From Scyliorhinus canicula (taxonomy: Eukaryota), in contig NC_052154.1 in assembly GCF_902713615.1 (NCBI RefSeq), positions 162,139,988 through 162,203,987 of the forward strand: a stretch of 64,000 bases of DNA. The letters are read 5' to 3'. Shown here piece after piece: positions 1 through 51,830 of the stretch. The translations under genes and the position numbers were made by a program. Under the pieces are notes generated by a model. It worked only from the letters and a program-made list of their open reading frames with translations. It was not told where the DNA came from and did no database searches. The stretch's first letter is position 1. Each line of letters opens with the position of its first letter.

Positions 1-132
1 GTGATGAAGGCCATCCAGGAAGCTCGTAAAATGAGAGAACAATTGCAACGAGAGCAGCAGTTACAGCAGCCTGGGATTGATGGGAAGATGTCATCCATGA
101 ATAGCCTGGGAATTAACTGCACGGGTAATAAG
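1..132 (+). CDS. SOX6: SOX6 coding exon, 5' end outside the window; coiled-coil/Q-rich region
   Basis: Translates [44 protein letters not shown], close to vertebrate SOX6 as recalled ([33 protein letters not shown]...). Ends at a consensus donor AAG|GTAAGT (GT 133-134), phase 0. Confidence 0.95.
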
Positions 133-46873: not shown

Positions 46874-47731
46874 ATCAAGGAACATCATAGAAAAATTTAT
46901 ACAGAAAGCAACACCACAGAGTGTGGGAAGAGAGTGATGTGAGAGAACGATGAACAAATGCCTGGATAATATTCATTCACTCTTGCTTCTTAATCAAACT
47001 AAAAATACTAAAAATGTTCACTCCGGCTTAGCTAAGAGAAGCTGTCCTCACATTGTGATTTCTGCTTGTGAAGCATGGTTTACTTACAGACCTGAAGGTG
47101 CACCTTCATTAGATTAGAGAGCCTTTTGAATTAGTGTCAAGAATGCAGCAATTTCAGATTGAGCTGAACCTGAACTTGCAGCTTTCTCCAGCTCATCAAA
47201 CTGTCACTCAGTAATACTCAGTCCTGACACACTGAACAATGTTTTGGTGCCAAAAGAGATCCGTGTGTTCACTCTCCGAGGGCCCCATTGCACAAGGGAC
47301 CGCGTGTTTATCTTTGTAAAGGTGCCGGAACCTGATGACTCAACATATTCTGACATGTAAGAATAAAGGTTGAACATTTATGCATGCACACAAGCATATT
47401 TATTCTGCTAAAAGAGTGTCAATCAGAAAGCAATGGCACCGGGGGCATCATAAATTTCTGAACTGATCCTGAGGAACAGACACTAGCTGTCATGTCTGAA
47501 CTAGCATTTCACTGCTGGGGTAATGGATGCCTTCATCTGGCCCAGCAGTCAGCAGATTGCCCTGTGTTGATGGATACTGTCAGCTGAATGCTACACTAGA
47601 TTTCACCGCACAATAAACACGGCTCTCTGAGCCCATGCAAAGTGAAATCAATTTATCCTGTATGCTCTGCGCATGCTAAATAAAATTAATGTACTGTGTT
47701 GCTCTCTTTTCTTCCTGCTCCAATGTTTCAG

Positions 47732-47965
47732 GGAGTAAGGCAATGAATGGGTCTCCAGCTAAACTACAGCAGTATTATTGTTGACCAACAGGAAGCACTA
47801 CGGTGACGGAGGCACGGGTCTACAGAGAAACCAGGGGTCGCAGCAACAATGAACCACATATCAAACGACCAATGAATGCGTTCATGGTGTGGGCAAAGGA
47901 CGAGCGCAGGAAGATACTGCAGGCATTTCCAGACATGCATAACTCAAACATCAGCAAAATCTTGG
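47732..47965 (+). CDS. SOX6: SOX6 exon with N-terminal half of the HMG box, long form (234 nt, phase 1 to 1), with in-frame TGA at 47782-47784
   Basis: Strong pyrimidine tract ending TTTCAG (AG 47730-47731). Translates (G)[76 protein letters not shown](G), the SoxD HMG signature. Donor G|GTGAGT at 47966. Confidence 0.9.
47792..47965 (+). CDS. SOX6: SOX6 HMG exon, predicted short form using the downstream acceptor (174 nt, open frame)
   Basis: CAG 47789-47791 is exactly 60 nt downstream of the first acceptor and in the same phase. Using it skips the TGA and gives ...[18 protein letters not shown]...HIKRPMNAF. Confidence 0.75.
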
Positions 47966-48457
47966 GTGAGTAGCTGAAGGAAATGTCTCAAACCACACTA
48001 TGGACACCCTTTAATAACTTTTTCTGACAGTATGATACCCAACTTATATAAATCATTATTGTACGTTGTATATCCAGAGTCAGAGGTCTGTACCGAAAAT
48101 AACTTTCAGCATTGCAATAAATATATTAACAAAGCCACATTTATGAATGGATATTTAGAATTTTGGTGTCATAGAGTCATACAGTACAGAAGAGGCCCTT
48201 TGGCTCATCGTTTTTATTTTATGGCACATTTTCCCATTTTGCACTTAGCCGTAATGACACCTTGTTGTTGATACTTGACGTAGATATTCTGTCCATCCCA
48301 CAATGATATAATTACAATGGAAACCACAGCAACTTTTTCAAATTGACGAGATGTCCTCCTGGATTTACGTGAGAGTTTTCTCAATCATTTGTTGTAGGAT
48401 CTATGAATCTTTGAAGTAACAGGACAAAACTAACTTTACTTCCTCGTGAAATATAGT

Positions 48458-49066: not shown

Positions 49067-49319
49067 AGTATTTTGTTTCTGGGTCAACTTAGTAAAATAC
49101 AAAATTAAAGGTAAAAAGACGATTGAAAGCGTAAATGATGTAAGCAGTCAAAAGCAGAATCTTTACGGTCTAGAAAGATGGTGTTTAATGAGGGCAACAT
49201 CATCAAGTGAAATAAAATATTAGATGGTAAGGATAAACCAGTTTATTCCTTCAAATTAAGTCAAGGCAGAAGGATCAGAAGACATAAATGGAAATGAATG
49301 CCAAATGCGTTTAGGAGAG

Positions 49320-51830
49320 TCAAACAGTACAGAAGATATCCTTCGGTCCTTTGAGTCTGCGCCGACAAAACTATATTAAATCTACATTAATCCCACTTCC
49401 CAGCTCTTGAGCCATAACCTTGAACGTTATGACATTTCAAGTGCTCATCCATGTATTTTGTAAAGGTTGTGAGGTTTCCTGCCGATGCTACCCTCCCAGG
49501 CAATGCATTCCAGACTGCACCACCCTCTGGGTGAAAAAGCTTTTCCTCAATTCCCCTCTAAACCTCCTACTCCTCACCCTAAAAGGGAACAACTGCTCCC
49601 TATCTACCTTGTCCATACCCCTCATAATCTTATACACTTAATCAGTTCCCCCTCAGCCTTCTCTGCTCAAAAGAAAACAACCTGAGCCTACCCAACCTCA
49701 CTTCATAGATCAAATGGTCCATCCCAGGTAACATTCTGGTGAATCCGGACCTGAGGATTTGTCCACTTTTCAGCCCACTAAAACCTCCAATACCTCCTCA
49801 CTTCCTATGTCGAACTATTCAAGAGCCTCACAGTCCCTCTCGTACCTACATCCTCCTTCTCCCATGTGTAGACTTGTGAAATACTTGTTTAACACCCTAC
49901 CAATGTCCTCTGGTTCCACTCACAGGTTGTCCCTTGGCCCCTAATGGGTCTTATTCCTTCCTTGGTTACCCTCTTCCACTTAATATACTTATGGAATATT
50001 TTAGGATTCTCCCAAATCTTACCCACCAGTGCTTTTTCATGCCACCTTTTTGCTCTCCTAATTTATTTCTTAAATTCCCCTGCACTTTCTATAGTCCACT
50101 AAAGCTTCCAATGGTTTGCTTGCCTTGTACCTGCTAAAAACCTCTCTATTCTTTCTTATCCAGTCCTGAATTATCCCTCGACATCCAGGTTTTCTGGGCT
50201 TGTTGCTCCTATGTTTCACCCTAAAGGAAACATGTTGGGCCTGTATTCTTCTCTATTTCCTTTATGAACCCCCCCCCCCCCCCCCCCCCCCCCCCGGCCA
50301 CCCCGCCCACCCCACTGCTGTGCTATAGACTTTCCAACAACAAGCTGTTCCCAGTTAACTGTGGGCAGCACGGTAGCATTGTGGATAGCGCATTCGCTTC
50401 AGAGCTCCAGGGTCCCAGGTTTGATTCCCGGCTTGGGTCACTGTCTATGCGGAGTCTGCACATCTTCCCCGTATGTGCGTGGGTTTCCTCCGGGTGCTCC
50501 TGTTTCCTCCCACAGTCCAAAGATGTGCAGGTTAGGTGGATTGGCCATGCTAAATTGCCCTTAGTGTCCAAAATTGCCCTTAGTGTTGGGTGGGGTTACT
50601 GGGTTATGGGGATAGGGTGGCGGTGTTAACCTTGGGTAGGGTGCTCTTTCCAGGAGCCGGTGCAGACTCGATGGGCCGAATGGCCTCTTTCTGCACTGTA
50701 AATTCTATGTAATCTATGTAATATCCTGGCTTCTTTTAATGAAATCTGCCTTCCGCAATCCAAAACCGTTTTTTGCAGACTATCTTTTTTCTTTTTCGTT
50801 GCAAACTTAAATGGTACTGTGTTGTGTTCACTACACTAAAATGCTCCCCCACTGCGACCTCGAACACCTACCTGGTTTCGACCCCCAGAATTAGATACAG
50901 CACTGCGCCGTCCCTTGCTGGAACCTGCCACATATTGATAGAACAAGCTCTCCTGAATACTTTTCAAGAAATCCGCCGCCTCTAAACCTTTTACACAATG
51001 GCTATCCCAATTAATGTTGTAGAAATTGAAATGTCCGAATATAAATGACCCTATTCTCATTTTTAAACACTTGTACATTGTCTACTGAATTAATTTAAAC
51101 ACCTTCCAGCAGCAGTAGTAAACCCAGACACAAGGGTGTTGGGTTCATTCTGGTTCTGGGACAGACCACCCGGCTTGTACATGTCCCAACTTCCCTGAAA
51201 CGGCCTCCATGGCCCTGGAATCTAAAACCATTCTTCCTGCACCATGACCTCTGACATATCATCCTCACCCTTTTGGACGTCCTGCAGCCATTGAGTGACT
51301 TACCTGACCCTAACGCCAGGGAGCCAACACACCATCTTGGAGTCACGTCTGTGGCCGCAGAAATGCCTGTCTGTTCCCCTAACTAATGAATTCCCTATTA
51401 CTATTGCTCCTTCTTCCTCCCCTCTGGTGCTTGTGGTGCCAGAGGCTTAGCTCTGACTGCACTCCCGTAAAGAACTAGCGTCCGCACCAGCTTCCAAAGT
51501 GGGAAACCTATTTATAGCAGGATCCTAGTGGATTCCTGCACTACCTGCTTGTTTCTCTCGGACAGCCCGGTGATCACCCTTCATTCCTCCAGTTCCCTGA
51601 GCTGTGGTGTGATCACATCTCTAAATGTGCTATCCACGTAACTCTTAGCTTCTCGGATGTGCCACAGTATCTCCAGCCGCTGCTTGAGCTCCAAAACCTG
51701 GAGCCCAAATTCCTGCAGTTAGGAGCACGTCTTGAACATGTGATACTCTAGGATGCCAGCAGAGTTTATGACTTCCCACATGACAGATCACAAATTCCAC
51801 TTGGCTGACCTTACCCGCCATGCCTTAACT
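49320..51830 (-). mobile_element. Internally deleted CR1 LINE with remnants of ORF1 (SGNH esterase), endonuclease and 3' end
   Basis: Minus strand near 51290-51407 reads AIVIGNSLVRGTDRHFCGHRRDSKMVCWLPGVRV; also RSWCRKNGFRF, and GHFNFYNINWD...FLKSIQESL (endonuclease). Confidence 0.8.
50362..50720 (+). mobile_element. Young HE1/V-SINE inside the CR1
   Basis: Near-intact head, V-domain and tail. Confidence 0.9.

What the first reader, a model, noticed from the sequence alone, without database searches (positions are those of the whole stretch)
47732..47791. In-frame UGA replacing a conserved Trp in SOX6, inside a 60-nt segment between two in-frame acceptors just upstream of the HMG box
Seen: the strong acceptor (AG 47730-47731, long pyrimidine tract, TTAAT branch-like motif 47686-47690) opens [23 protein letters not shown] weaker CAG exactly 60 nt later skips the stop in frame. 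Knowledge (recalled): mammalian SOX6 reads [20 protein letters not shown] here and has isoforms lacking this segment. So 18 of 20 codons keep the amino acid and the stop is one G>A from TGG, which does not look like neutral decay. Inference, four options: (a) an alternative-3'ss poison switch, since the stop is 181 nt upstream of the next junction and should trigger NMD; (b) a truncated SoxD that keeps its dimerisation coiled-coils but lacks the HMG box, i.e. a dominant negative; (c) recoding, either A-to-I editing (UGA>UGI, read as Trp, restoring the ancestral residue exactly) or readthrough in a UGA-C context; (d) a private allele or assembly error.
Basis: partly seen in the sequence, partly recalled or inferred. 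Interest (0 to 1): 0.9.

Follow-up and report, generated by a model that had tools for sequence, protein, structure and literature searches.

The report
Stop codon in optional SOX6 segment
The developmental regulator gene SOX6 in this genome has a real stop codon where every other vertebrate examined has tryptophan. It lies in a 60-base stretch that splicing can skip, so it most likely removes only the longer of two protein versions, not the gene.

Summary
Exon 47732-47965 encodes the SOX6 linker and the start of the HMG box, and TGA at 47782-47784 replaces a Trp that is invariant in 132 of 132 fetched SOX6 proteins. It is not an assembly error: 31-letter words covering 47784 occur in eight DNA runs from two samples of the species, plus one run under another label. 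Runs of two close relatives hold about 0.6 of the surrounding words but none of these, so the stop looks young.

The stop sits in a 60-nt 5' extension found only in SOX6. SOX5, SOX13, hagfish, lamprey and amphioxus SoxD lack it. A smelt, a gadiform and a tetrapod-like species have lost it. Teleost short forms, including the named trout SOX-LZ entry, join at exactly the distal acceptor.

The extension is 90-93% identical in nucleotides to tetrapod-like contigs, more than the HMG-coding part. RNA assemblies of this species hold a word share matching the short exon only.

Most likely a recent TGG>TGA change disables the long isoform, whose transcripts should undergo NMD, while the short isoform carries function. 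Editing and readthrough find no support. This is a new member of a known kind, of moderate interest.

The parts
1..132 (+). SOX6 coding exon, cut by the window start (…[20 protein letters not shown]…NCTGNK)
   Evidence: tblastn of bird and pangolin SOX6 (P0016, P0027) on the window
31953..32061 (+). SOX6 exon just upstream ([36 protein letters not shown] + first base of Gly), donor GTGAGT
47686..47690 (+). Branch-point-like TTAAT, 41 nt upstream of the proximal AG. An AAT/AAC motif sits at the same place in the aligned bird-like and teleost contigs.
47706..47731 (+). Pyrimidine tract and proximal (upstream) acceptor, AG at 47730-47731
   Evidence: 12 of 16 pyrimidines at -20 to -5; conserved in L003-L006
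47732..47791 (+). 60-nt SOX6-specific 5' extension of the exon (20 codons). It serves both as long-isoform coding sequence and as the 3' splice region of the distal acceptor. It is 56/60 and 54/60 identical to the tetrapod-like contigs.
47782..47784 (+). In-frame TGA at the position of an invariant Trp (TGG in all aligned species). The A at 47784 is position -8 of the distal acceptor.
47789..47791 (+). Distal acceptor CAG, in frame. It is the same junction as in SOX5, SOX13, cyclostome SoxD and teleost short SOX6.
47792..47965 (+). Core exon shared by both isoforms: the linker plus the first 35 positions of the HMG box (the Pfam match starts near 47860)
   Evidence: PF00505, 45.4 bits, cutoff 25.4
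47966..47971 (+). Donor GTGAGT. The next SOX6 exon lies beyond the window.

Best explanation
A germline TGG>TGA substitution has hit the optional, SOX6-specific 60-nt extension of the exon that precedes the HMG box. It is young on an evolutionary scale but present in at least two sequenced samples. The exon has two in-frame acceptors. The distal one (exon start 47792) gives the ancestral SoxD arrangement and an intact protein. The proximal one (exon start 47732) now gives an mRNA with a stop 181 nt upstream of the next exon junction, which should be removed by nonsense-mediated decay. SOX6 function in this species is therefore carried by the short isoform, and the long isoform (the one seen in all fetched tetrapod proteins) has been lost or turned into an unproductive splice product. 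Shown: the base, the two acceptors, the frame, the conservation, and the dispensability of the extension in other lineages. Inferred: that the short form is the expressed one here, that long-form transcripts undergo NMD, and that relatives still have TGG.
For: The TGA is real in DNA of two samples and one further label. Trp is invariant in 132 of 132 proteins, and TGG is present in every aligned genomic copy. The extension is absent from SOX5, SOX13, hagfish, lamprey and amphioxus SoxD, which join at the position of the distal acceptor. It has been lost independently elsewhere: in Osmerus the proximal AG is now CTG and the coding sequence has decayed; in Muraenolepis it is replaced by a (GT)n run; in the tetrapod-like contigs L001/L002 it is absent. 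All 120 best hits to a salmonid short junction are short forms from many teleost orders, among them a GenBank entry named SOX-LZ from trout. The 23-nt block around the distal AG is identical, synonymous sites included, in bird-like, mammal-like and two teleost contigs. This fits a functional distal splice site. RNA assemblies of organism A (X17, X20) hold 0.20 of the sampled words of 47400-48100. The expected share is 0.215 for the short exon and 0.304 for the long one. X20 holds none of the three words that cover 47784. DNA runs of relatives B and C hold 0.64 and 0.61 of the surrounding words but are not among the holders of those three words. The other SOX6 exons in the window are intact.
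Against: Isoform use therefore rests on word shares of assembled contigs, which drop rare variants. The proximal acceptor looks stronger than the distal one (12 versus 9 pyrimidines of 16; five other AGs lie in between), so much pre-mRNA may still be spliced to the poisoned form. The letter at 47784 in the relatives is inferred, not read. No cartilaginous-fish SOX6 sequence could be retrieved. Use of both acceptors in a single species with an intact extension was not directly shown.
Confidence: 0.6

Rival explanations
1. A selected poison switch: the stop is kept because choice between the two acceptors, coupled to NMD, tunes the SOX6 dose.
For: The anatomy matches AS-NMD: two in-frame acceptors, a stop only in the long form, 181 nt before the next junction. 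The extension and its flanking intron are unusually conserved in nucleotides (56/60 versus a bird-like contig; only 94/117 in the HMG part), as is typical for regulated alternative splicing.
Against: That conservation is shared with species that have TGG and so reflects the ancestral coding and splicing role, not the stop. Relatives B and C lack the words that carry the TGA, which suggests a young change. No expression data are available.
Confidence: 0.15
2. A segregating loss-of-long-isoform allele: the TGA is a polymorphism, perhaps heterozygous in the sequenced animals, and TGG alleles are common in the species.
For: Only two or three samples are known to carry it. Assembled contigs cannot show a second allele. 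Very close relatives appear to lack it.
Against: It was found in every DNA sample of organism A that was listed as a holder, from two studies five years apart, and under a second organism label. RNA assemblies show no long-form words at all, which would be unexpected if an intact long allele were expressed.
Confidence: 0.15
3. A truncated SOX6 that keeps the coiled-coil dimerisation region but lacks the HMG box is produced from the long transcript and acts as a dominant negative partner of SoxD proteins.
For: The proximal acceptor is intact and looks strong. The stop lies just before the HMG box. HMG-less Sox isoforms exist in nature, for example t-Sox17 (abstract of PMC2120827, listed).
Against: By the 50-55 nt rule (established knowledge) the stop position predicts NMD. 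RNA assemblies of the species do not hold the long-form words. No protein evidence exists.
Confidence: 0.06
4. Recoding restores the long protein: A-to-I editing of UGA to UGI (read as Trp), or stop-codon readthrough.
For: One G>A step separates the stop from the ancestral codon. The base after the stop is C, the leakiest context for UGA (established knowledge). The rest of the segment keeps its coding sequence.
Against: The 201 nt around the site fold no better than shuffled sequence (z = +1.1). No inverted repeat within 1 kb pairs with the site. The edited A would have a 5' G, the neighbour ADARs like least (established knowledge). There is no UGA-CUAG readthrough motif. The intact coding state is equally explained by a young mutation.
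Confidence: 0.03
5. A sequencing or assembly error: the true base is G.
For: A single-base difference in an otherwise invariant block.
Against: Exact 31-mers covering the A are present in eight DNA runs of two samples and in one more run.
Confidence: 0.01

Closest known systems
Short SOX6 isoform of teleosts (e.g. rainbow trout SOX-LZ, BAA09617.1, P0381)
   Same: The junction …[10 protein letters not shown]|G/S…EARVY… is the one the distal acceptor at 47792 would give here. It yields a full SoxD protein without the 20-residue segment.
   Different: In Osmerus and Muraenolepis the extension itself is degraded or gone. Here the extension is almost perfectly preserved and carries a single stop.
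Alternative splicing coupled to nonsense-mediated decay (unproductive splicing at an alternative 3' splice site)
   Same: Two competing acceptors, with a premature stop only in one product, more than 55 nt upstream of a downstream junction.
   Different: Classical cases are ancient, conserved and autoregulatory. Here the stop seems confined to one species or a very narrow group, and the poisoned form is the ancestral coding isoform. NMD and regulation were not tested.
SOX5, SOX13 and cyclostome or invertebrate SoxD genes
   Same: The same exon with only the distal-type junction, and the same HMG start.
   Different: They never had, or do not show, the 20-residue [20 protein letters not shown] segment.
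HMG-less Sox isoforms such as t-Sox17 (PMC2120827)
   Same: A Sox product without a working HMG box arising from alternative mRNA processing. This is what the long transcript would encode here if translated.
   Different: t-Sox17 is a documented stable mRNA isoform. Here the truncated product is hypothetical and expected to be removed by NMD.

Membership tests
SOX6 (SoxD group) gene | HMG box of the Sox type at the right place | tested here: met
   PF00505 at 45.4 bits (cutoff 25.4) on residues 26-60 of the post-stop piece. The piece is 85-92% identical to SoxD proteins.
SOX6 (SoxD group) gene | SOX6-specific flanking exons and the [19 protein letters not shown] segment | tested here: met
   Three exons align in order to bird and pangolin SOX6. 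The segment occurs only in proteins named SOX-6, not in SOX5, SOX13 or outgroups.
Alternative 3' splice site coupled to NMD | Two usable acceptors, with a stop only in the longer product | tested here: met
   AG at 47730-31 and at 47790-91, 60 nt apart and in frame, with TGA at 47782-84 between them.
Alternative 3' splice site coupled to NMD | Stop more than 50-55 nt upstream of a downstream exon junction | tested here: met
   181 nt to the donor at 47965/47966. Further SOX6 exons must follow, because the HMG box is incomplete.
Alternative 3' splice site coupled to NMD | Both splice forms are made in vivo | tested here: inconclusive
   The word share of RNA assemblies fits the short exon only (0.20 observed against 0.215 expected). 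Read-level junction counts were impossible.
Alternative 3' splice site coupled to NMD | The long form is stabilised when NMD is blocked | not testable with these tools
   Needs UPF1 knock-down or cycloheximide treatment of cells from this species.
ADAR A-to-I recoding site | Double-stranded RNA around the edited A | tested here: not met
   MFE -46.3 kcal/mol against a shuffle mean of -50.8, z = +1.1. No inverted repeat covers 47770-47800 within 1 kb on either side.
ADAR A-to-I recoding site | A-to-G mismatch between RNA and DNA | not testable with these tools
Word data only show that RNA assemblies lack the unedited long-form words.
Programmed stop-codon readthrough | Readthrough-promoting context (UGA-CUAG or a downstream structure) | tested here: not met
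   The context is UGA-CCAACA, with no stable structure downstream. Only the +4 C is favourable.
Selenocysteine codon | SECIS element in the 3' UTR | not testable with these tools
   The 3' UTR is outside the window. There is no SECIS hit in the window. Sec replacing a conserved Trp has no precedent known to me.

The most novel reading that the evidence does not exclude
The UGA is decoded, by readthrough inserting Trp or by A-to-I editing, so that this animal still makes the long SOX6 isoform from a gene whose DNA says stop. Recoding would then add a new layer of control on a master regulator of cartilage and muscle.
Probability: 0.03. Interest if true: 0.85.

Novelty: new member of a known kind. 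Interest (0 to 1): 0.4.

Why it matters
SOX6 is a key regulator of cartilage, muscle fibre type, erythroid and neuronal development. Every tetrapod SOX6 protein fetched here contains the 20-residue segment. Its nucleotide sequence is more conserved between this genome and tetrapod-like contigs than the HMG-box coding sequence itself. A natural allele that stops only this isoform in a cartilaginous-fish-like genome is a ready-made isoform knock-out. It suggests that the short, ancestral-type isoform is enough for viability. It also gives a way to ask what the extension does, and whether the ultraconserved block is kept for splicing control rather than for protein. If the proximal acceptor is still heavily used, the mutation would also lower SOX6 output through NMD, a dosage change in a dosage-sensitive gene. 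None of this is a new kind of mechanism.

Tried and rejected
So there are no read depths, junction counts or RNA/DNA comparison.

2. Retrieving cartilaginous-fish SOX6 proteins failed.
- A region search with a mammalian SOX6 returned only mammals and one bird in the best 120.
- A search with the 60-residue window piece is limited to proteins of 33-105 residues and found nothing above 88% identity, apart from a 55-residue carp fragment at 94%.
- I tested offline whether a profile built from a hagfish or multi-HMG scaffold plus window pieces would rank shark-like proteins first. The gain was only 4-22 bits against isoform differences of up to 80 bits, so I dropped it.

3. Exact look-ups of three window ORFs near the exon, meant to fetch Logan contigs of this species or its relatives, found nothing on record.

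4. A metagenome scan for the 29-nt block with N at 47784 found nothing.

5. Literature searches found no description of this 60-nt alternative acceptor or of an NMD isoform of SOX6.

6. The TTGAC (yUnAy) motif created by the G>A change at 47781-47785 was considered as a new branch point. I rejected it as unlikely because it is only 7 nt from the distal AG.

7. L001/L002, the best protein hit (92%), were considered as possible cartilaginous-fish copies. They are closest to the tetrapod-like contigs (82-83% against 79% to the window).

Full report
**What is there**

The window holds three consecutive SOX6 coding exons: 1-132 (cut by the window start), 31953-32061 and 47732-47965. They align in order to bird and pangolin SOX6 proteins.

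The third exon follows a pyrimidine-rich tract and an AG at 47730-47731, and starts in phase 1. From 47734 it reads [16 protein letters not shown], then TGA at 47782-47784, then [60 protein letters not shown], up to a GTGAGT donor at 47966. The part after the stop matches the Pfam HMG box at 45.4 bits, against a cutoff of 25.4.

A second CAG ends at 47791, exactly 60 nt after the first acceptor and in frame. The stop is 181 nt upstream of the exon's donor.

**Is the stop real?**

I could not lay reads.

The run index gives indirect but strong evidence. I queried 47754-47814, a 61-nt stretch in which every 31-letter word covers 47784. All three sampled words are held by four DNA runs of a 2024 sample and four of a 2019 sample of the same species ('organism A'). 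One DNA run under another label ('organism I') also holds them. An assembly or consensus error is therefore very unlikely. Whether the animals are homozygous cannot be told from assembled contigs.

**How unusual is it?**

A profile-free search of 1.84 billion representatives with the post-stop piece, and a region search with a full SOX6, returned SOX6 proteins of mammals, birds and teleosts. They read …[35 protein letters not shown]… or teleost variants of this. Trp is present in 132 of 132 fetched proteins that carry the segment. This genome matches the mammalian 20 residues at 18 positions; the differences are Ala to Pro and Trp to stop.

I fetched genomic copies of the exon from a bird-like contig, a mammal-like contig and two teleosts and aligned them. 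Nucleotide identity of the window to the two tetrapod-like copies is:

| Part of the exon | Identity to the window |
|---|---|
| 60-nt segment | 56/60 and 54/60 |
| Linker | 36-38/57 |
| HMG-coding part | 94-100/117 |

A 23-nt block, TATTATTGTTGGCCAACAGGAGG, is identical in all four copies, synonymous positions included. The window differs from it only by the G>A at 47784 and one base after the distal AG.

So the stop is a single change in one of the most constrained stretches of the gene. That is expected if the change is recent. It also shows that the stretch is constrained as RNA or DNA, not only as protein.

**What the 60 nt are**

SOX5, SOX13, a hagfish Sox-6-like protein, a lamprey SoxD and amphioxus SoxD all lack the 20 residues. 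They join the preceding exon directly to …EAR(V/I)(Y/F)R…. The distal acceptor is thus the ancestral SoxD junction, and the 60 nt are a SOX6-specific 5' extension of the exon.

The extension is dispensable in evolution:
- In Osmerus mordax the proximal AG has become CTG and the segment's coding sequence has drifted, while TTGGCCAACAG|G is kept. The annotated protein uses the distal site.
- In Muraenolepis the segment is replaced by a (GT)n run.
- In two contigs of a tetrapod-like species it is absent.

A search with a salmonid short junction returned 120 of 120 short forms from salmonids, cyprinids, elopomorphs, gadiforms, pipefishes, notothenioids and others. Among them is a GenBank entry named SOX-LZ from rainbow trout. 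A catfish is annotated with the long form. A Logan genomic ORF whose linker matches the cyprinid short forms exactly still has the open extension with Trp. Both forms therefore probably coexist in some fishes, but I did not show that in one named species.

**What this species expresses**

Only word shares are available. Two RNA assemblies of organism A hold 0.20 of the 69 sampled words of 47400-48100. The expected shares are:
- 0.215 for a message that holds only 47792-47965;
- 0.304 for one that holds 47732-47965;
- 0.258 for the long form with the words over 47784 broken.

One of these runs, and nine further RNA assemblies of the species, hold none of the three words over 47784. This fits the short form as the assembled message. 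It does not exclude a minority of long-form transcripts.

An RNA run of another organism (D) holds 0.28. That would fit a long form differing at or near 47784, but this is a reading of counts, not of sequence.

**Age of the stop**

DNA runs of two close relatives (B, in at least five samples, and C) hold 0.64 and 0.61 of the words of the 701-nt stretch. That corresponds to about 1.4-1.6% divergence if spread evenly. They are not among the holders of any of the three words over 47784. The block is otherwise invariant from teleosts to mammals. The simplest reading is therefore that they carry G at 47784 and that the stop arose after the split. This is an inference; I put it at roughly three in four.

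**Mechanism and rivals**

With the stop only in the proximal-acceptor product, and 181 nt before the next junction, the long transcript is a textbook NMD substrate (established 50-55 nt rule). The short transcript encodes a complete SoxD protein of the ancestral design.

I therefore favour a recent isoform-specific nonsense mutation (0.6). The rivals are:
- **A selected AS-NMD dose switch (0.15).** It shares the mechanism but needs the stop to be maintained, which the relatives seem to contradict.
- **A segregating allele (0.15).** This cannot be excluded.
- **A truncated, HMG-less dominant-negative protein (0.06).** It requires escape from NMD.
- **Recoding (0.03).** It finds no support. The region folds no better than shuffles (z = +1.1). 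No inverted repeat pairs with it. The A has a 5' G. The downstream context is CCAACA, not CUAG.

One caveat concerns the acceptors. The proximal one looks the stronger of the two (12 against 9 pyrimidines of 16), and five other AGs lie between them. Much primary transcript may therefore still be spliced to the poisoned form, which would lower SOX6 output.

**Comparison and verdict**

The thing works like alternative splicing coupled to NMD. It resembles the loss of the extension seen in several fish lineages, caught here at its first step. It is a new member of a known kind. It is interesting mainly as a natural knock-out of the ultraconserved long SOX6 isoform, and as a pointer to a deeply conserved alternative acceptor for which I found no description in four literature searches.

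I score 0.4.

Noticed in passing
window 35315-35391, minus strand: Rfam gathering-level match to the CPEB3 (HDV-like) self-cleaving ribozyme: 37.4 bits against a cutoff of 35, full model length. It lies in the SOX6 intron, antisense to the gene. The outer helix has two non-standard pairs and a 2-nt deletion. It could be a retrotransposon-borne HDV-like ribozyme.
   Followed up: partly
window 47732-47796 and the intron just upstream (47686-47731): The 60-nt SOX6 exon extension is 90-93% identical in nucleotides to tetrapod-like contigs, more than the HMG-box coding part (80-85%). A 23-nt block around the distal AG is identical, synonymous sites included, in bird-like, mammal-like and teleost copies. 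Parts of the upstream intron (an AAT/AAC motif and TTCTTCCTGC) also align. This suggests a deeply conserved splicing-control element.
   Followed up: partly
L007:17297-17516 (Osmerus mordax) and L008:12105-12292 (Muraenolepis orangiensis): Independent loss of the SOX6 long isoform. In the smelt the proximal AG is CTG and the segment has drifted. In the gadiform the segment is replaced by a (GT)n microsatellite.
   Followed up: yes
L001:1030-1401 and L002:875-1246 (Logan contigs of SRR32377441 and SRR32377442): A SOX6-like HMG exon with only the distal acceptor and no trace of the 60-nt extension. In nucleotides it is closest to the tetrapod-like copies. The organism is unknown.
   Followed up: partly
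window 48173-48203 and 49316-49346: Two copies (84% alike) of a 31-nt motif, AGAGTCATACAGTACAGAAGAGGCCCTTTGG, probably part of a dispersed repeat just downstream of the exon.
   Followed up: no
window 47520-47576: This stretch made the read-laying tool refuse the whole call. The tool says the filter also trips by chance and is no evidence of anything. Future calls should start at about 47600.
   Followed up: no
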